DNA from: Macrostomum lignano
Taxonomy: Eukaryota
Direction: 5' to 3'
Assembly (NCBI GenBank): GCA_002269645.1
Contig: NIVC01001539.1
Location: 1-64,000, forward strand
Length of the DNA stretch: 64,000 nt
The translations under genes were made by a program, and so were the position numbers. Shown piece by piece: positions 16,129 to 62,574 of the stretch; the stretch's first letter is position 1, and each line of letters starts with the position of its first letter. The notes under the pieces were generated by a model, which saw only the letters and a list, made by a program, of their open reading frames with translations, had not been told where the DNA came from and searched no databases.

Positions 16129-33287
<17,159 letters not shown>

Positions 33288-33837
33288 TGGCTTCTGAACA
33301 AATTAAATAAATTATTCATATTTTAATTTTTTAATTTATCCATATAAAAGAATTGACAAATAAAATAGAACTCCGTTAAGAAATTTTAATTTTAACTAAA
33401 ATGGTTTTATAATTTAACTTTAGTGCGCGTTTCGAATAGGTTCTTTAAATTTTGTTGTATTCTATCTAGTGACACTGAGTTAGCAGTGTTGTAATGCTAG
33501 GGTTGAAAGCAATTTTTAGATTTGTAATTTGTAGTCAATTCATAACTTCTTCATATTTTGTTACTCAATATTCAACTTTTACGCATTCATTCCCAGTTAT
33601 TTGAATTTGAATTTTTGTTGAACCAAAAATAAGGGGGGACCCTTGAAAAAGTCAAACCAGATTAATAAAAAATTTGATATGGTTTTTGAGTCACTGTCTG
33701 CCCCATCCCATGCCTTCATCATTAAAGATTACTTTAATTGGAATTTGTTTTATCGCAATAAATATGCTGTCAATAAATATAAGCACTGCAACTTAATAAG
33801 TACTTTGAATTGGTGTAACTGAAGTATTTATAGTTTC

Positions 33838-38809: not shown

Positions 38810-39540
38810 TGACAGCAGCATCTTCATAACAAGAGTCTGTGTGACAGAATCTTCACGAAAAGAGTCTGTATGACAGCATCTTCATAACAAGAGTCTGTAT
38901 GACAGCATCTTCATGACAAGAGTCTGTATGACAGCATCTTCATAACAAGAGTCTGTATGACAGAATCTTCATAACCTGAGTCTGTATGACTGCATTTTCT
39001 GACAGCATATTTATGACAGCATCTTCATGACAGCATCTTCATGAGAGCATCTTCATAACAGCATCTTCATGACAGCATCTTCATGACAGCATCTTCATGA
39101 CAGCATCTTCATAACAGCATCTTCATGACAGCATCTTCATGACAGCATCTTCATAACAGAATCTTCATAACAGCATCTTCATAACAGCATCTTCATAACA
39201 GCATCTTCATGACAGCATCTTCATGACAGCATCTTCATGACAGCATCTTCATGACAGCATCTTCATGACAGCATCTTCATGACAGCATCTTCATGACAGC
39301 ATCTTCATGACAGCATCTTCATGACAGCGTCTTCATGACAGCATCTTCATGACAGCATCTTCATGACAGCATCTTCATGACAGCATCTTCATAACAGCAT
39401 CTTCATGACAGCATCTTCATAACAGCGTCTTCATGACAGCATCTTCATGACAGCATCTTCATGACAGCATCTTCATGACAGCATCTTCATAACAGCATCT
39501 TCATGACAGCATCTTTATGACAGCATCTTCATGACAGCAT
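38810..39540. repeat. Minisatellite grading from a 29-nt to a 14-nt unit (GACAGCATCTTCAT)
   Basis: Direct reading. Confidence 0.93.
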
Positions 39541-40412
39541 CAGAGATGCCAAATAGCTTCAACCCTGGTTGGCTGCACTGCACTGCCTGCAGACTGGCTA
39601 ACCAATGAACGGGCCATGCTGCAGTGAGTATGCGGGCCGGCTGCCCATAGGTAAAAATGTTTTAAAGCCGCAGAGCCGACCGAAGCATCCCAGTTGCGCG
39701 AAAATTATTTTTAAAAACTGCGAGCTCTGTTCCTCATTGAAAAAGTTCGGCTTGCTCTGCAACTGTTTCGGCCGAAATCTCAAAGGTGAGAGGCGGTGAC
39801 ATTAAATCATTGGTTTGGTATCTGAGTGGCTTCGAAATCTTATTATCTGAGGTGAAAAGAAGGCAGCAGATCCGAGTAGGCACCGAGATTTACAACTTTC
39901 CAAGTTGGACTCAAGGCGCCAGAAGCACGAATCACCATGGAACACGCAGTCGCTCACGCAGGGTGTTACAGCAGTCCTGGCTTGTTTTTTAGTTGGGAAA
40001 TTGTTCCCTGTGTCAAGAATCTTTCCTTGGCTAATCAAGGGCTGCTTCTTTACTGCAGCAGGTGGGAAAGCACCCGCTGCGATGGCCTCAAGAACAAGGA
40101 GACCAGGCGCATGCGGTGACTGCATTGTGGCCAAATTTAGCATGCAGCTGCTTCTGCAGCAGAGCTGGCAAAGTATTCTCAAGTGGGTCTCAGTCCCCGG
40201 GGCAGCGATGGAGGCAGCTGCGCTTGAGAAAATGAAGAGCAGTTTTAAAGGCAAGTTTTTTGCGCCTGGGAGAAGGCTGAAAAGGCTGGAAAACAGCGCG
40301 GGAATGAGACGGGGAGAAATTCGAGAAATATTGAAACCGAACCGATTTGAACTCAGTGCCATTTGACAATTACATTTGCGCTCCTCTTTCAAATTTGAAG
40401 AACTGCTAGAAG

Positions 40413-40482
40413 ATGCACCGACTGTCGATCCTGCTGCTGGCTGCTGGACTGCTGGCTACCGGACTCGCCTGCTGCGCTTCTG
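40413..40482 (+). CDS. Prohormone exon 1 (signal peptide)
   Basis: Basic N-terminus, hydrophobic core LSILLLAAGLLATGL; donor G|GTGAGC. Confidence 0.8.
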
Positions 40483-42550
40483 GTGAGCTGCTCCGACTGA
40501 TTCACACTTTGCCGACATTGACTTGGGGTCAGGGGAGCTTTTATTGGGGAAGGGGCGCCAGCACCTAGGGGCTGTGAGTAGGGACTGTAAACAGTAGCTG
40601 TGTGAACAGTAGCTGTGTGAACAGTAGCTGTGTGAACAGTAGCTGTGTGAACAGTGGCTGTGTGAACAGTGGCTGTGTGAACAGTGGCTGCGTGAACAGT
40701 GGCTGTGTGAACAGTAGCTGTGTGAACAGTGGCTGTGTGAACAGTGACTGTGTGAACAGTGGCTGTGTGAACAGTGGCTGTGTGAACAGTAGCTGTGTGA
40801 ACAGTGGCTGTGTGAACAGTGGCTGTGTAAGCAATGGCTGTGTGAACAGTAGCTGTGTGAACAGTGGCTGTGTGAACAGTGACTGTGTGAACAGTGACTG
40901 TGTGAACAGTGGCTGTGTGAACAGTGATTGTGTGAACAGTGGCTGTGTGAACAGTAGCTGTGTGAACTGTGGCTGTGTGAACAGTGGCTGTGTGAACAGT
41001 GGCTGTGTGAACAGTGACTGTGTGAACAGTGGCTGTGTGAACAGTGGCTGTGTGAACAGTGATTGTGTGAACAGTGGCTGTGTGAACAGTAGCTGTGTGA
41101 ACTGTGGCTGTGTGAACAGTGGCTGTGTGAACAGTGGCTGTGTGAACATAACTTTGTGAACATGACTTTGTGAACATGACTTTGTGAACATGACTTTGTG
41201 AACATGACTTTGTGAACATGACTCTTTGCAGGCGCCGCCGCTGCCGCTCCGCCGGCCGCCGACTCCTACTTGGCCGCCGCCGCCAGCCGCCACGAGCCGG
41301 TCCGCTTCAAGAAAGGCTTCCACTTCTTCAGGCTGCGCCGTCGCCCGTCGGCCGAAGAGGTGTGCAGCATCGATCCGGACTCTGCGGCGGCCGTGATGGC
41401 AGCTGTTGTGAGTTGATGGACTCGGTGACTGACTGTGGTACTGGGGACCTGCCATGGACAACTAAATTAGATGGACGATGGGGGGCAGAGCAGCTCAGCG
41501 GTGAACGCGGCTGAATCTCGCGCTACGAACCCCTGGTTCGATTCCGTTCGATTCATTTAAGGCTTGTGAACTAAAATTGGCCGGGCGGGGGTTCGTGCGG
41601 TTCACAGCTAAGAGAGCCAACCCCCAGCTCATGTACACCCTGTGTGAGCGCGTGTACGAGTGCGTGCCTGCGTACAGTATTGTGATGTCACCGAAGGACG
41701 ATGTCACCGAAGGACGATGTCACCGAAGGACGATGTCACCGAAGGACGATGTCACCGAAGGACGATGTCACCGAAGGACGATGTCACCGAAGGACGATGT
41801 CACCGAAGGACGATGTCACCGAAGGACGATGTCACCGAAGGACTATGTCACCGAAGGACGATGTCACCGAAGGACGATGTCACCGAAGGAAAATGTTACC
41901 GGGGTGCCCGCAGCCCTGCCTGCATTTTCATAAAACTGTTGCATCAATAAAATTTTTTAAAAACCTAGTTCCTACTGGAAAGAGAGTCATAAATTTACAG
42001 GTAGAAACTGAAAGCTTCCATTCTACGTATTTTCCCATTGAAATTGCTCAATTCCCAAGTGTGAGACCCTCCCGCTTTAATTGTCCACGAATTCTCGGCC
42101 GCATGTCCAGTAGAAGGTGGGAAAACGCTCAGAGCTCAGTGCCTGCCCTCGGCTCGCAACAAAAGCTTGCTGCCTTCAATTAAACTTGCAAGACACGGGA
42201 GGCGCGTGCTTGAGTAGTCCGTGCGCGAGAATTGAAGACAATAGCGCGCCGCAAGCAGCTAATTATTAATTTAATGAGCGCGCTAGCAACGCCAGCGGAC
42301 ACCATCGGGTGTGGAAGACGGAAGTTCTTGCTTGTTACTGGTTGGAGACCAGGAGAAAATAGTCAGTTTTAGCCAACTCTGTTTCCCATCACAATGATTC
42401 AACTAGCGGCTGCTCCACCCACCGCTGTCATGTCTGCTCTGCAGCTCAGTTGCCCCCCCATCCCGCTTTCAGCGTGCGGCCAAGGCTGGGCAGCTTTGCG
42501 AGAGGGACCGCGCCTTCCTGCGTCTGATGGTCAACGAGCTGCTGCAGTGA
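40413..42550 (+). CDS. Secreted neuropeptide prohormone (GFHFFRL), 3 exons, 107 aa
   Basis: Exons 40413-40482, 41232-41407, 42473-42550 with canonical GT-AG boundaries and matching phases. Protein: MHRLSILLLAAGLLATGLACCAS-GAAAAAPPAADSYLAAAASRHEPVRF-KK-GFHFFRL-RRR-PSAEEVCSIDPDSAAAVMAAVRAAKAGQLCERDRAFLRLMVNELLQ*. Confidence 0.85.
40588..41222. repeat. 15-nt (TGTGTGAACAGTGGC) then 14-nt (TGTGAACATGACTT) arrays, prohormone intron 1
   Basis: Direct reading. Confidence 0.95.
41232..41407 (+). CDS. Prohormone exon 2 (mature peptide at 41315-41335)
   Basis: CTCTTTGCAG acceptor, GTGAGT donor; KK-GFHFFRL-RRR. Confidence 0.85.
41480..41685 (+). mobile_element. tRNA-derived SINE-like element
   Basis: A box CAGCTCAGCGG (41491), perfect B box GGTTCGATTCC (41535); shares 3' motifs with the 10.2-kb element. 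Confidence 0.6.
41684..41895. repeat. 16-nt minisatellite (GATGTCACCGAAGGAC), prohormone intron 2
   Basis: Direct reading. Confidence 0.95.
42473..42550 (+). CDS. Prohormone exon 3
   Basis: GCTTTCAG acceptor; RAAKAGQLCERDRAFLRLMVNELLQ*. Confidence 0.75.
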   Translation, partial: RAAKAGQLCERDRAFLRLMVNELLQ

Positions 42551-43193
42551 ACAGCCAACGCAGTTACCGATCTTTGCTATTGAAAACTATATTCAGAACT
42601 GAACTTCGAATCATTAGACTTCGACTTCGATTTTTGTTAGCGTCGGTCAAGACGCCGGAACACCAATAATAATGAAGGACACCGCGCTTCGAAAGAAATC
42701 AACATCCTAAATCCCCGTACGAGTCAAAAGGCTCTTATCTGCAGACATGCAGCTCTCAAACCGCGTTCAACAAGATTCTTCTTTCTTTTTTCGATCAGCT
42801 GCGCGCGTCCTCCGGTGGGGCGGCTCTGAGTGAGAGAAAAGTTTGTTCTGTCCCCCTGATGCGTGTCCCGTATTGACCGGAGCATGAACATCACATGCAC
42901 ACACGGGACTAAGCAACTCAATCTCTCATGGGCCAGTAATTTATGCATAGATAAATCCATGCTTTAATCCGGTATGCAGTGTCGAGCCCCCCCCCCCCCC
43001 CCCGAGTATCTGGGGCTCCGAATTTACATGCCTTTCCTGGCACAAGTAGTTTTAACTAAACCGCACAGCAGCCTTTACACGAGCGTAGTATAGAAGTGCC
43101 GCTCAGAGTCCCTTTGTTAAAAACACTTTTTCAAGTTTAAACATGCAGCAGAGTAGTTGTATGTGGAGAATGGGGTTCGATCGCCGCTTTTTA

Positions 43194-44935
43194 CAGGGTT
43201 GGCGCCCGTGTCTGTGAGGGTTGGCTTCTGTCTGTGAGGGTTGGCCCCTGTCTGTGAGGGTTGGCGCCACTGTCTGTGAGGGTTGGCCCCTGTCTGTGAG
43301 GGTTGGCCCCTGTCTGTGAGGGTTGGCCCCTGTCTGTGAGGGTTGGCGCCACTGTCTGTGAGGGTTGGCCCCTGTCTGTGAGGGTTGGCCCCTGTCTGTG
43401 AGGGTTGGCCCCTGTCTGTGAGGGTTGGCCCCTGTCTGTGAGGGTTGGCGCCCGTGTCTGTGAGGGTTGGCCCCTGTCTGTGAGGGTTGGCTTCTGTCTG
43501 TGAGGGTTGGCGCCCGTGTCTGTGAGGGTTGGCTTCTGTCTGTGAGGGTTGGCCCCTGTCTGTGAGGGTTGGCGCCACTGTCTGTGAGGGTTGGCCCCTG
43601 TCTGTGAGGGTTGGCCCCTGTCTGTGAGGGTTGGCCCCTGTCTGTGAGGGTTGGCCCCTGTCTGTGAGGGTTGGCCCCTGTCTGTGAGGGTTGGCCCCTG
43701 TCTGTGAGGGTTGGCCCCTGTCTGTGAGGGTTGGCCCCTGTCTGTGAGGGTTGGCCCCTGTCTGTGAGGGTTGGCCCCTGTCTGTGAGGGTTGGCGCCCG
43801 TGTCTGTGAGGGTTGGCCCCTGTCTGTGAGGGTTGGCCCCTGTCTGTGAGGGTTGGCGCCCGTGTCTGTGAGGGTTGGCGCCCGTGTCTGTGAGGGTTGG
43901 CCCCTGTCTGTGAGGGTTGGCCCCTGTCTGTGAGGGTTGGCGCCCCTGTCTGTGAGGGTTGGCTTCTGTCTGTGAGGGTTGGCGCCCGTGTCTGTGAGGG
44001 TTGGCGCCCGTGTCTGTGAGGGTTGGCCCCTGTCTGTGAGGGTTGGCCCCTGTCTGTGAGGGTTGGCTTCTGTCTGTGAGGGTTGGCGCCCGTGTCTGTG
44101 AGGGTTGGCCCCTGTCTGTGAGGGTTGGCCCCTGTCTGTGAGGGTTGGCGCCCCTGTCTGTGAGGGTTGGCGCCCGTGTCTGTGAGGGTTGGCCCCTGTC
44201 TGTGAGGGTTGGCCCCTGTCTGTGAGGGTTGGCGCCCCTGTCTGTGAGGGTTGGCCCCTGTCTGTGAGGGTTGGCCCCTGTCTGTGAGGGTTGGCGCCTG
44301 TCTGTGAGGGCTGGCGCCCCTGTCTGTGAGGGTTGGCACCTGTGTCTGTGAGGGTTGGCCCCTGTCTGTGAGGGTTGGCCCCTGTCTGTGAGGGTTGGCG
44401 CCCCTGTCTGTGAGGGTTGGCCCCTGTCTGTGAGGGTTGGCCCCTGTCTGTGAGGGTTGGCGCCTGTGTCTGTGAGGGCTGGCGCCCCTGTCTGTGAGGG
44501 TTGGCACCTGTGTCTGTGAGGGTTGGCGCCCCTGTCTGTGAGGGTTGGCCCCTGTCTGTGAGGGTTGGCGCCTGTGTCTGTGAGGGTTGGCGCCCCTGTC
44601 TGTGAGGGCTGGCGCCCCTGTCTGTGAGGGTTGGTCCCTGTCTGCGAGGGTTGGCCCGTCTGCGAGGGTTGGCCCCTGTCTGTGAGGGTTGGCGCCCGTG
44701 TCTGTGAGGGTTGGCGCCCCTGTCTGTGAGGGTTGGTCCCTGTCTGCGAGGGTTGGCCCCTGTCTGCGAGGGTTGGCCCCTGTGTGTGAGGGTTGGCGCC
44801 CGTGTCTGTGAGGGTTGGCCCCTGTCTGTGAGGGTTGGCCCCTGTCTGTGAGGGTTGGCGCTTGTGTCTGTGAGGGTTGGCCCCTGCGTCTGTGAGGGTT
44901 GGCGCCTGTGTCTGTGAGGGTTGGCGCCCCTGTAT
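43194..44935. repeat. 20-23-nt minisatellite (GTCTGTGAGGGTTGGCCCCT)
   Basis: Direct reading. Confidence 0.95.
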
Positions 44936-45229
44936 TATTAAAAGCTAATTTAACGATGCTCCAGTCATAAAATAATTGTAAACCACAGGCTTTATTACTT
45001 TCGCCAAGCTGCTGATCGCAGTAACAATTCTTTTCACACAATGCTCAAGACTCACTTTGAAGGGTGGACAAAAATGCATTACTTCAGGCTCCTAGCGAGC
45101 AGAGTCACTTATTAAGCCCTGGGGAATTCCGAGAGCCAGTTGCACCTGATCTTGCAAGCTCAGCTGCACAATGACTGTAGCAGTCTCTTACAGGCAGATC
45201 TGTCACTCCACTCCACCTTGTCCATCTCA

Positions 45230-45810
45230 GTCACACCAAGCACATAAAAACCACACTAAGCACATGAGAATCACACCAAGCACACGAGAATCACATATCA
45301 AGCACATGAGAATCACACTAAGCACACGAGAATCACACCAAGTACAGGAGAATCACACGAAGCACATGAGAATCACACCAAACACATGAAAATCACAAAA
45401 AGCACACGAGAATCACACCAAGCACATGAGAATTACACCAAGTACATGAGAATCACACCAAGCACATGAGAATCACACTAAGCACGAGATTCACACGAAG
45501 CACATGAGAATCACACCAAGCACATGAGAATCACACCAAGCACATGAGAATTACACCAAGCACACGAGAATCACACTAAGCACGAGATTCACACGAAGCA
45601 CATGAGAATCACACCAAGCACATGAGAATCACACCAAGCACATGAGAATTACACCAAGCACATGAGAATCACACTAAGCACGAGTTTCACACCAAGCACG
45701 AGATTCACACCAAGCACATGAGAATCACACCAAGCACATGAGAATTACACCAAGCACATGAGAATCACACTAAGTACATGAGAATCACACCAAGCACATG
45801 AGAATCACAA
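45230..45810. repeat. 20-nt minisatellite (CAAGCACATGAGAATCACAC)
   Basis: Direct reading. Confidence 0.93.
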
Positions 45811-46469: not shown

Positions 46470-46915
46470 ATGAACCACACGGTGAACTACCAGGTGAACA
46501 ACAAGATAAACTACCAGGAAAACTAACAGGTTAACCACCAGGTAAACTAACAGGTTAACCACCAGGTAAACCAACAGGTTAACCACCAGGTAAACCAGGT
46601 AGGAGCAAACTAGTTAAACTACAAATTAACCACCAGTTTAAATTCCGGGTTAGCTACCAGGTTTACCACTAGTTTAAATTCCTGGTTAGCTACCAGGTTT
46701 ACCACTAGTTTAAATTTTGGGTTAGCTACCAGGTTTACCACCAGTTTAAATTCCGGGTTAGCTACCAGGTGTACCACCAGTTTAAATTCCGGGTAAGCTA
46801 CCAGGTGTACCACCAGTTTAAATTCCGGGTTAGCTACCAGGTTTACCACCAGTTTAAATTCCGGGTTAGCTACCAGGTTAACCACCAGTTTAAATTCCGG
46901 GTTAGCTACCAAGTG
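46470..46915. repeat. ACCAGGT-containing arrays, including a 36-nt unit
   Basis: Unit ACCACCAGTTTAAATTCCGGGTTAGCTACCAGGTTT. Confidence 0.85.
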
Positions 46916-47082
46916 AGCTAATTAAACCACCAGGCGAACTCACGCAAACCCAGCTAGATAAAACCCAGATGAGCCATTCATTATCAGGTGAACTATCAGG
47001 TAAAGTCAAGCAACACCTAGAAACAAAAACTACAAAAGCTTGCAGACCGGGGCATTTGGAGCAGCATCAACCCATTGATAGC

Positions 47083-62574
<15,492 letters not shown>

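What the first reader, a model, noticed from the sequence alone, without database searches (positions are those of the whole stretch)
40413..42550. Hidden three-exon neuropeptide prohormone encoding GFHFFRL
Seen: absent from the ORF track because the exons are 70, 176 and 78 nt. Splicing gives a signal peptide, a spacer, KK-GFHFFRL-RRR and a C-terminal region with two Cys 23 residues apart. Established: prohormone convertases cut at dibasic sites; no Gly donor follows, so the peptide would be non-amidated. From memory, and needing verification, flatworms have [G/A]YHFFRL peptides (planarian SPP-18/19, schistosome NPP-28). This would be a Tyr>Phe variant from a free-living lineage, and I know of no identified receptor. 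Its position 7 kb from a GABA-degrading gene may be incidental.
Basis: partly seen in the sequence, partly recalled or inferred. Interest (0 to 1): 0.8.

Follow-up and report, generated by a model that had tools for sequence, protein, structure and literature searches.

The report
Flatworm FRL-peptide prohormone gene (GFHFFRL)
This is a real three-exon gene of the free-living flatworm Macrostomum lignano for a small secreted prohormone that should release the peptide GFHFFRL. It belongs to a flatworm neuropeptide family known since 2010 and is already in GenBank as a "hypothetical protein", so it is a correct but fairly ordinary find.

Summary
Exons 40413-40482, 41232-41407 and 42473-42550 have GT..AG borders and splice into a 107-aa protein with a signal-peptide-like N-terminus, KK-GFHFFRL-RRR, and Cys68/Cys91.

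The window is M. lignano contig NIVC01001539.1. GenBank already holds this exact CDS (BOX15_Mlig034597g1), from an RNA-seq-based annotation, so it is unnamed rather than hidden.

Planarian spp-18/-19 (GYHFFRL, confirmed by mass spectrometry as the free acid) and schistosome npp-28 (AYHFFRL) align over the peptide and over the C-terminal Cys loop. BLASTP against spp-19 gives E=4e-10. An HMM built without Macrostomum sequences scores 34.8 bits, against at most 11.3 for 20,000 shuffles. Intron phases (1, 0) match S. mansoni npp-28 and two M. lignano paralogues.

An exhaustive search found the family only in flatworms. It includes GnRH-like precursors (Smed grh-1, polyclad "GnRH-2", Mlig008027) that carry the same FRL-peptide and Cys-loop module after a GnRH-like peptide. 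This gene is best read as a GnRH-less paralogue.

Tyr>Phe is not unique (Fasciolopsis AFHFFRI, Smed grh-1 GFHYFRL). No receptor or function is known. Verdict: new member of a known kind, modest interest.

The parts
39605..39787 (+). Probable non-coding 5' exon. Its start is uncertain. The donor is AAG|gtgaga at 39787/39788.
   Evidence: An older UniProt gene model (P0005) reads through this stretch and joins it to the acceptor at 40410. This is inferred from a public model, not from reads.
40400..40412 (+). Splice acceptor ctgctag|AAG, 3 nt before the ATG. It may be an SL trans-splice (outron) acceptor.
   Evidence: Two different public models (P0002, P0005) join different upstream exons to this same point. 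About 39% of M. lignano genes are trans-spliced (PMC5730564). Trans-splicing at this site is an inference.
40413..40482 (+). Coding exon 1 (70 nt): Met1 to the first base of codon 24. It encodes the signal-peptide-like segment MHRLSILLLAAGLLATGLACCAS.
   Evidence: charged n-region, a 16-residue hydrophobic core, and small residues at -3/-1. It is identical to GenBank protein P0001.
40483..41231 (+). Intron 1 (phase 1), mostly a 15-nt minisatellite (40586-41218, about 42 copies).
   Evidence: The duplicate locus has the same borders but only 272 nt.
41232..41407 (+). Coding exon 2 (176 nt): Ala-rich spacer, degenerate first module HEPVRF, KK-GFHFFRL-RRR, and Cys68 with the first half of the loop.
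41315..41335 (+). Codons for the predicted mature heptapeptide GFHFFRL. The flanking KK is at 41309-41314 and RRR at 41336-41344.
   Evidence: The orthologous GYHFFRL was detected by mass spectrometry in planarians.
41408..42472 (+). Intron 2 (phase 0), containing a 16-nt minisatellite at 41684-41901.
   Evidence: Its phase and its position relative to the second Cys are the same in Mlig013730 and Mlig008027. S. mansoni npp-28 has the same phase and a near-equivalent position.
42473..42550 (+). Coding exon 3 (78 nt including TGA): RAAKAGQLC(91)ERDRAFLRLMVNELLQ*. This is the conserved LCxxD[RK]xF[LI] end of the Cys loop.

Best explanation
This is Mlig034597, a Macrostomum lignano member of the flatworm 'FRL-containing' prohormone family (planarian spp-18/spp-19, schistosome npp-28).

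Likely mechanism:
- The 107-aa preproprotein enters the secretory pathway through its N-terminal signal peptide.
- A PC2-type convertase cuts at K50K51 and within R59R60R61.
- A carboxypeptidase E-type enzyme trims the basic residues, releasing the free-acid heptapeptide GFHFFRL. It is not amidated because no Gly follows.
- A 46-residue C-terminal peptide is also released. Its Cys68 and Cys91 probably form a disulfide that staples a helix-loop-helix.
- The peptide would then act on a still unidentified receptor, presumably a GPCR, from a small set of neurons.

Evolution: the gene is a paralogue of the flatworm GnRH-like precursor. It has lost the GnRH-like peptide, its second module (HQIFRL) has decayed to HEPVRF, and it keeps the YHFFRL-type peptide and the Cys loop.

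Shown here: the gene model, the homology, the conserved gene structure and public transcript-based annotation. Inferred: signal cleavage, convertase processing, the disulfide, neuronal expression and receptor action.
For: - Gene model: canonical splice sites and an intact 324-nt CDS. The identical 107-aa protein is GenBank BOX15_Mlig034597g1, called at exactly 40413-42550 of NIVC01001539.1. That annotation derives from RNA-seq transcript assemblies (PMC5730564).
- Second copy: a copy on another contig (g3) keeps the same three exons and borders.
- Homology: BLASTP against Smed spp-19 gives E=4e-10 over the peptide plus Cys loop. Against Mlig013730 it gives 1e-22 and against Mlig008027 1e-12. 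An HMM built from non-Macrostomum members only scores 34.8 bits, against at most 11.3 for 20,000 shuffles.
- Conserved columns across 18 members: H54, F56, R57, C68 and C91 are invariant; K50, F55 and D94 are nearly invariant.
- Gene structure: three coding exons with intron phases 1 and 0 in this gene, in Mlig013730, in Mlig008027 and in S. mansoni npp-28. The last exon starts 8 residues before Cys2 in all three M. lignano genes.
- Processing in relatives: KR.GYHFFRL.KK and KR.GYHFFRL.RK were sequenced by tandem MS in S. mediterranea at 938.48 Da, the free-acid mass.
- Expression in relatives: spp-18/-19 are expressed in discrete coe+ neurons (PMC4214590).
- GnRH link: Smed grh-1, polyclad 'GnRH-2' and Mlig008027 carry Q-x-x-HFS-x-GW-x-PG-KR followed by HQ[IM]FRL, G[YF]H[FY]FRL and the same Cys loop. 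Collins et al. group grh-1, spp-18 and spp-19 as 'FRL-containing'.
Against: - No SignalP or NeuroPred run was possible. The signal peptide and cleavage sites rest on simple rules, and the long Ala run makes the exact signal-peptidase site ambiguous.
- RRR is followed by Pro. This may hinder cleavage after the third Arg, although cutting after R59R60 would still yield GFHFFRL.
- I saw no RNA-seq reads, peptidomics or expression data for M. lignano itself.
- The two near-identical copies differ by 1 synonymous and 2 non-synonymous changes. That is too few to show purifying selection.
- M. lignano has a more canonical paralogue, Mlig013730 with HQIFRL and GYHFFRL, so this copy could be drifting.
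- The AlphaFold model is of low confidence (pLDDT 63).
Confidence: 0.83

Rival explanations
1. The working product is the conserved disulfide-looped C-terminal peptide, or the whole secreted protein. The heptapeptide would be only a by-product or spacer of processing.
For: The C-terminal region is conserved from Macrostomum to schistosomes and cestodes: C68, C91, D94 and the F/L at 97-98. This module is also what persists in the GnRH-like precursors.
Against: The heptapeptide is the most conserved stretch of the whole family, with H-F-F-R-L nearly invariant and always flanked by dibasic sites. It accumulates as a discrete peptide in planarians. The two readings do not exclude each other.
Confidence: 0.1
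2. It is a decaying, redundant duplicate (a nascent pseudogene) of the canonical M. lignano GYHFFRL gene Mlig013730. It would be transcribed but no longer under selection.
For: The first module has degenerated (HQIFRL to HEPVRF, with no upstream dibasic site). Tyr has changed to Phe. The two copies differ by 2 non-synonymous and 1 synonymous change.
Against: The ORF, both splice-site pairs, the dibasic sites, both Cys and the LCxxDRxFL motif are intact in both copies, despite only 45% identity to Mlig013730. That much divergence with every family-defining position kept argues for constraint. Phe or Leu at position 2 also occurs in other species' only copy.
Confidence: 0.06
3. It is a chance assembly of short open frames in GC-rich, repeat-rich DNA and not a gene.
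For: The exons are short. The surrounding DNA is full of minisatellites that produce long meaningless ORFs on both strands. Older public models of the same locus are frameshifted (P0004-P0007).
Against: The model is identical to an RNA-seq-based GenBank CDS. The homology to independent species is significant. Intron positions are conserved.
Confidence: 0.01

Closest known systems
Smed-spp-19 and Smed-spp-18 (Schmidtea mediterranea secreted peptide prohormones 19 and 18; Collins et al. 2010)
   Same: Both have a signal peptide, one dibasic-flanked non-amidated x-[YF]-HFFRL heptapeptide, then C-x(19-23)-C with LCxxD[RK]xF[LI]. spp-19 also has an upstream HQIFRL module, which aligns with HEPVRF here.
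   Different: This gene has Phe instead of Tyr at position 2. Its precursor is longer and Ala-rich, with a 4-residue insert (PSAE) before Cys1. The first module is degenerate and lacks an upstream dibasic site. Identity is only about 30%.
Sma/Sja-npp-28 (Smp_043650) and its trematode and cestode orthologues
   Same: The architecture is the same. The gene layout is the same three coding exons with intron phases 1 and 0.
   Different: The parasite peptides are AYHFFRL, AFHFFRI or GLHFFRL. Their Cys loop is shorter and the C-terminus ends at ...DREFLGL. The S. mansoni introns are 14 kb and 5 kb.
M. lignano Mlig013730 (PAA71739.1 / PAA88328.1)
   Same: This is the closest relative: 45% identity, E=1e-22. 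It is also 107 aa, has the same 78-nt last exon and the same PS..E.EVC.ID insert. It too lacks a GnRH-like peptide.
   Different: It keeps canonical HQIFRL-KK-GYHFFRL-KK.
Flatworm GnRH-like precursors: Smed-grh-1, Stylochoplana and Notocomplana 'GnRH-2', and M. lignano Mlig008027
   Same: After the GnRH-like peptide they carry the same HQxFRL and G[YF]H[FY]FRL peptides and the same Cys loop. The M. lignano gene has the same two intron phases and the same last-exon start.
   Different: They begin with Q-x-x-HFS-x-GW-x-PG-KR straight after the signal peptide. This gene has no such peptide, and no such motif is encoded anywhere in the 64-kb window.

Membership tests
Flatworm FRL-containing prohormones (spp-18 / spp-19 / npp-28) | N-terminal secretory signal peptide | tested here: met
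   The N-terminus has MHR, then a 16-residue hydrophobic core, then small residues at -3/-1 (CAS|G); hydropathy peaks at 2.5. This is a heuristic only, since SignalP was not available. The signal peptide ends at the exon 1 boundary, as in the relatives.
Flatworm FRL-containing prohormones (spp-18 / spp-19 / npp-28) | One [GA]-[YFL]-H-[FY]-F-R-[LI] heptapeptide bounded by dibasic sites, with no C-terminal Gly (free acid) | tested here: met
   KK-GFHFFRL-RRR is present. The alignment of 18 members is.
Flatworm FRL-containing prohormones (spp-18 / spp-19 / npp-28) | C-terminal domain with two Cys 19-23 residues apart and [LIV]-C-x-x-D-[RK]-x-[FL]-[LI] | tested here: met
   C68...QLC91ERDRAFL is present. 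C68 and C91 are invariant and D94 nearly invariant.
Flatworm FRL-containing prohormones (spp-18 / spp-19 / npp-28) | Statistically significant similarity beyond the heptapeptide | tested here: met
   BLASTP against spp-19 gives E=4e-10. An HMM excluding Macrostomum scores 34.8 bits, against at most 11.3 for 20,000 shuffles, with the alignment running from KK to LRLMV.
Flatworm FRL-containing prohormones (spp-18 / spp-19 / npp-28) | Shared gene structure: a phase-1 intron after the signal peptide and a phase-0 intron inside the Cys loop | tested here: met
   Exon lengths are 70/176/78 here, 82/116/48 in S. mansoni npp-28 and 79/167/78 in Mlig013730. All have phases 1 and 0.
Flatworm FRL-containing prohormones (spp-18 / spp-19 / npp-28) | Mature peptide actually produced, and expression in neurons | not testable with these tools
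   This is known only for planarian relatives: mass spectrometry and in situ hybridisation.
GnRH / corazonin-type precursors (flatworm grh-1 / 'GnRH-2') | pQ-x-[YF]-H-F-S-x-G-W-x-P-G(amide) peptide directly after the signal peptide | tested here: not met
   The residues after the signal peptide are GAAAAAPPAADSYL... A six-frame motif scan of the whole window finds no GnRH-like motif.
GnRH / corazonin-type precursors (flatworm grh-1 / 'GnRH-2') | Associated region with FRL peptides plus the Cys loop, and the same intron layout | tested here: met
   BLASTP against Mlig008027 gives E=1e-12. The gene is therefore a paralogue of the GnRH-like precursor, not a GnRH precursor.
GnRH / corazonin-type precursors of other phyla (molluscs, annelids) | Homology of the associated peptide and Cys loop outside Platyhelminthes | tested here: inconclusive
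   The exhaustive profile search found flatworm proteins only: 17 hits at E<=1e-3 among 1.84 billion representatives. A search with the GnRH-bearing flatworm profile also returned only flatworms. I could not obtain mollusc or annelid precursor sequences for a direct profile-profile test.

The most novel reading that the evidence does not exclude
The YHFFRL-type prohormones of flatworms, this gene included, are GnRH/corazonin-precursor paralogues. They have repeatedly shed the GnRH peptide while keeping the 'associated' FRL heptapeptide and disulfide loop. If so, the GnRH-associated region in flatworms is an independent, ancient signalling module with its own receptor, dating at least to the base of Rhabditophora. 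M. lignano shows all three stages side by side: Mlig008027 (GnRH + HQIFRL + GYHFFRL), Mlig013730 (HQIFRL + GYHFFRL) and Mlig034597 (GFHFFRL only). This would make it a tractable, transgenic system for finding that receptor. A more speculative extension is that the FRL peptides arose by internal duplication of the GnRH peptide, because both share a Y-H-F core.
Probability: 0.4. Interest if true: 0.5.

Novelty: new member of a known kind. Interest (0 to 1): 0.3.

Why it matters
- It gives a name and a likely product to an unnamed GenBank "hypothetical protein".
- It extends the YHFFRL (spp-18/19/npp-28) family to Macrostomorpha, an early-branching rhabditophoran lineage, so the family is old within flatworms.
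- The family includes peptides from schistosomes, liver flukes and tapeworms whose receptor is unknown. M. lignano is a free-living species in which transgenesis works, which makes it a convenient place to look for function and receptor.
- The side-by-side series of M. lignano paralogues with identical intron layout gives clean evidence that these prohormones descend from the GnRH-like precursor. Collins et al. 2010 only hinted at this with their 'FRL-containing' grouping.
- None of this overturns anything. A flatworm neuropeptide specialist would expect such an orthologue.

Tried and rejected
- Pfam scan of the protein: no family.
- Rfam scan of 39000-43500 and ARAGORN on the window: nothing above threshold. 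The tRNA-looking stretch at about 41483-41560 in intron 2 is not a recognised RNA.
- Minus-strand and other-frame ORFs over the locus (for example 40389-41219 on the minus strand and 41212-41514 and 42394-42669 on the plus strand): these are products of minisatellites or GC-rich alternative frames. They correspond to the frameshifted older models P0004-P0007 and have no homologues.
- Comparing the two M. lignano copies (g1 and g3) for selection: uninformative. CDS, introns and flanks are all 96-99% identical, with only 3 CDS differences.
- Looking for a missed GnRH-encoding exon: none anywhere in the window.
- Reaching non-flatworm GnRH precursors: the profile searches returned flatworm proteins only, and the mollusc GnRH paper I read (one of 10 hits) did not print a full precursor.
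- Structure route: the AlphaFold2 model had pLDDT 63 and pTM 0.32, too weak for a meaningful fold search, so I ran none.
- Literature: no paper in the library mentions Mlig034597, Mlig013730 or Mlig008027. The only neuropeptide paper containing 'HFFRL' is Collins et al. 2010. I found no receptor or functional study.
Full report
**1. The observation**

The sequence at 40413-42550 is as described.
- An ATG at 40413 opens a 70-nt exon that ends at a G|gtgagc donor.
- A ctctttgcag| acceptor opens a 176-nt exon (41232-41407) that ends at TT|gtgagt.
- A ccgctttcag| acceptor opens a 78-nt exon (42473-42550) that ends in TGA.
- The spliced CDS is 324 nt. The 107-aa product is MHRLSILLLAAGLLATGLACCAS GAAAAAPPAADSYLAAAASRHEPVRF KK GFHFFRL RRR PSAEEVC(68)SIDPDSAAAVMAAVRAAKAGQLC(91)ERDRAFLRLMVNELLQ.
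- The in-frame open stretches are 51 and 48 codons, and exon 3 has no start codon. A 60-aa ORF list therefore misses the gene.
- Both introns are dominated by minisatellites: a 15-mer with about 42 copies at 40586-41218 and a 16-mer with about 14 copies at 41684-41901. These also create long meaningless ORFs on both strands.

**2. Where the window comes from and whether the gene is "hidden"**

A protein search returned an identical 107-aa GenBank entry, hypothetical protein BOX15_Mlig034597g1 of Macrostomum lignano. It also returned a 98%-identical copy, g3.

The encoding contig is NIVC01001539.1 of assembly GCA_002269645.1. The called gene spans exactly 40413-42550 there, so the window is positions 1-64000 of that contig.

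The GenBank annotation of this assembly was produced from genome-guided RNA-seq transcript assemblies (StringTie/TACO/TBONE 'coregenes'; PMC5730564). A spliced transcript model with these junctions therefore already exists. I did not see the reads themselves.

The gene is hidden only from a prokaryote-style ORF list. It is unnamed, not unknown.

Older UniProt models of the locus (P0004-P0007) are frameshifted or skip exon 2. They reflect an earlier error-prone assembly.

**3. The family**

Collins et al. 2010 (PMC2953531) list GYHFFRL as a tandem-MS-confirmed peptide of S. mediterranea spp-18 and spp-19, and AYHFFRL as the predicted peptide of Sma/Sja-npp-28.

Their supplement gives the full precursors and the observed cleavages KR.GYHFFRL.KK and KR.GYHFFRL.RK at 938.48 Da. 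That is the free-acid mass; I calculate 938.477.

Aligned with the M. lignano protein, the similarity is not confined to the heptapeptide. All members share a dibasic site, x-[YF]-HFFRL, a second dibasic site, a few residues, then Cys, a 19-23-residue loop, and [LIV]-Cys-x-x-Asp-[Arg/Lys]-x-Phe-[Leu/Ile].

The statistics are:

| Comparison | Result |
|---|---|
| BLASTP against spp-19 | E=4e-10 |
| HMM from 15 non-Macrostomum members, scored on this protein | 34.8 bits |
| Same HMM on 20,000 shuffles of this protein | at most 11.3 bits |

**4. How wide the family is**

A word-indexed profile search found schistosomatid orthologues. An exhaustive HMMER search of 1.84 billion representative proteins found 17 hits at E<=1e-3, all from flatworms:
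- Trematodes: Fasciola, Fasciolopsis (AFHFFRI), Opisthorchis, Calicophoron, Paragonimus and Schistosoma species.
- Cestodes: Spirometra and Sparganum (GLHFFRL).
- Planarian: spp-18, spp-19 and grh-1.
- Polyclads: two proteins deposited as 'gonadotropin-releasing hormone-2'.
- M. lignano: two further gene groups (below).

Phe at position 2 is therefore one of several tolerated residues. It is not a distinctive variant.

**5. The GnRH connection**

Three of the hits begin with a GnRH-like peptide directly after the signal peptide. This is followed by HQ[IM]FRL, then G[YF]H[FY]FRL, then the same Cys loop.

| Precursor | GnRH-like peptide |
|---|---|
| Smed grh-1 | QSYHFSNDWLPG-KR |
| Stylochoplana GnRH-2 | QNMHFSNGWQPG-KR |
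| M. lignano Mlig008027 | QQFHFSHG(VN)GWKPG-KR |

Collins et al. had already grouped grh-1, spp-18 and spp-19 as 'FRL-containing'.

M. lignano holds a graded series:
- Mlig008027 has the GnRH-like peptide, HQIFRL, GYHFFRL and the loop.
- Mlig013730 has HQIFRL, GYHFFRL and the loop, with no GnRH-like peptide. It is 107 aa and 45% identical to the gene studied here (E=1e-22).
- Mlig034597, the gene studied here, has HEPVRF in place of HQIFRL with no dibasic site upstream, then GFHFFRL and the loop.

The gene structures agree.
- All three M. lignano genes, and S. mansoni npp-28, have three coding exons with intron phases 1 and 0.
- In all three M. lignano genes the last exon starts exactly 8 residues before the second Cys.
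- In Mlig008027 the first intron splits the GnRH-like peptide at the Gly of G-W. In the gene studied here the same phase-1 intron splits a Gly codon just after the signal peptide.
- No GnRH-like motif is encoded in any frame of the window.

The simplest reading is that this gene is a GnRH-less paralogue of the flatworm GnRH-like precursor. It probably arose by a Macrostomum-lineage duplication of a Mlig013730-like gene. That last step is an inference from identity and shared indels, not from a robust tree.

**6. Mechanism**

Inferred by analogy and standard prohormone biochemistry:
- Signal-peptide removal. The n-region is MHR, the h-region is LSILLLAAGLLATGLA, and many small residues follow, so the exact site is ambiguous.
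- Convertase cleavage at K50K51 and at R59-R61. Pro62 follows, so cutting after R60 is more likely than after R61. Either cut gives the same trimmed peptide.
- Carboxypeptidase trimming to GFHFFRL-OH ([M+H]+ 923.489).
- Release of a 46-residue C-peptide with no internal dibasic site. A low-confidence AlphaFold model (pLDDT 63) places each Cys just before one of two helices (72-84 and 92-105), which is compatible with a disulfide-stapled hairpin.

In planarians the orthologous peptide is made, and the genes mark discrete coe-dependent neurons (PMC4214590).

I found no receptor or function in the literature available.

**7. Surroundings**

- A GABA-transaminase-like gene ends at 33285-33287, with C-terminus ...[27 protein letters not shown]. 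It is Aminotran_3 in the duplicate locus.
- A MEKK4-like kinase of 1814 aa lies downstream on the minus strand.
- The same three-gene order is kept on the duplicate contig NIVC01000936.1. That contig is 96-99% identical in exons, introns and flanks, which fits the known large-scale duplication in the DV1 line.
- Two older public models join different upstream exons to one acceptor, ctag|AAGATG at 40410. One uses 39605-39787. The other uses a donor at the end of the GABA-T gene.
- That pattern suggests a 5' non-coding exon, an SL trans-splice acceptor 3 nt before the ATG, or both. I saw no functional link to GABA metabolism, and the adjacency is probably incidental.

**8. Verdict**

The gene is a new, unnamed member of a known flatworm neuropeptide family.

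The modest added value is twofold. It places the family in Macrostomorpha. It also provides clear structural evidence that the YHFFRL prohormones are GnRH-like-precursor paralogues that lost the GnRH peptide.

Interest is 0.3.

Noticed in passing
window 33180-33290 (+), and L002 1-2205: This is the last coding exon of a GABA-transaminase-like (Aminotran_3) gene, with its stop codon at 33285-33287. An older UniProt model (P0002) splices a donor at about 33284 to the prohormone's acceptor at 40410. That hints at read-through or polycistronic pre-mRNA.
   Followed up: partly
window 39605-39787 and 40400-40412 (+): A probable 5' non-coding exon has its donor AAG|gtgaga at 39787. An acceptor ctag|AAG lies 3 nt before the ATG and is used by two different public models. 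It may be an SL trans-splice site.
   Followed up: partly
window 46671-52550 and beyond (-); ORF 47083-48138 (-): A MEKK4-like protein kinase gene of 1814 aa (MEKK4_N + Pkinase) lies downstream on the minus strand. The gene order GABA-T, prohormone, MEKK4 is kept on the duplicate contig NIVC01000936.1.
   Followed up: partly
window 40586-41218, 41684-41901, 43195-44925, 45231-45809, 38870-39541: Large minisatellite arrays with 14-20-nt units lie in and around the gene. The intron 1 array differs greatly in length between the two gene copies (intron 1 is 749 nt here and 272 nt in the duplicate). The arrays generate long spurious ORFs, for example the 616-aa ORF at 43191-45041 (-).
   Followed up: partly
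L007 4160-4202 (M. lignano contig NIVC01000001.1, gene Mlig008027): M. lignano's GnRH-like gene encodes QQFHFSHGVNGWKPG in copies g1, g2 and g4, but QQFHFSHGWKPG in copy g6. This is a 6-nt (Val-Asn) difference inside the hormone itself. L007 shows no alternative GT donor that would explain it, so it looks like a copy-specific indel.
   Followed up: partly
window 41483-41560 (+), intron 2: A stretch superficially like a tRNA (GGGCAGAGCAGCTCAGCGGTGAACGCGGC...GGTTCGATTCC) occurs once in the window. Neither ARAGORN nor Rfam calls it. It may be a degraded tRNA-derived SINE fragment.
   Followed up: partly
window 24000-32000: The composition is strikingly uniform over about 8 kb: GC 0.41, GC skew +0.27, AT skew -0.55. 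This suggests a very long tandem array upstream of the GABA-T gene's 3' end.
   Followed up: no
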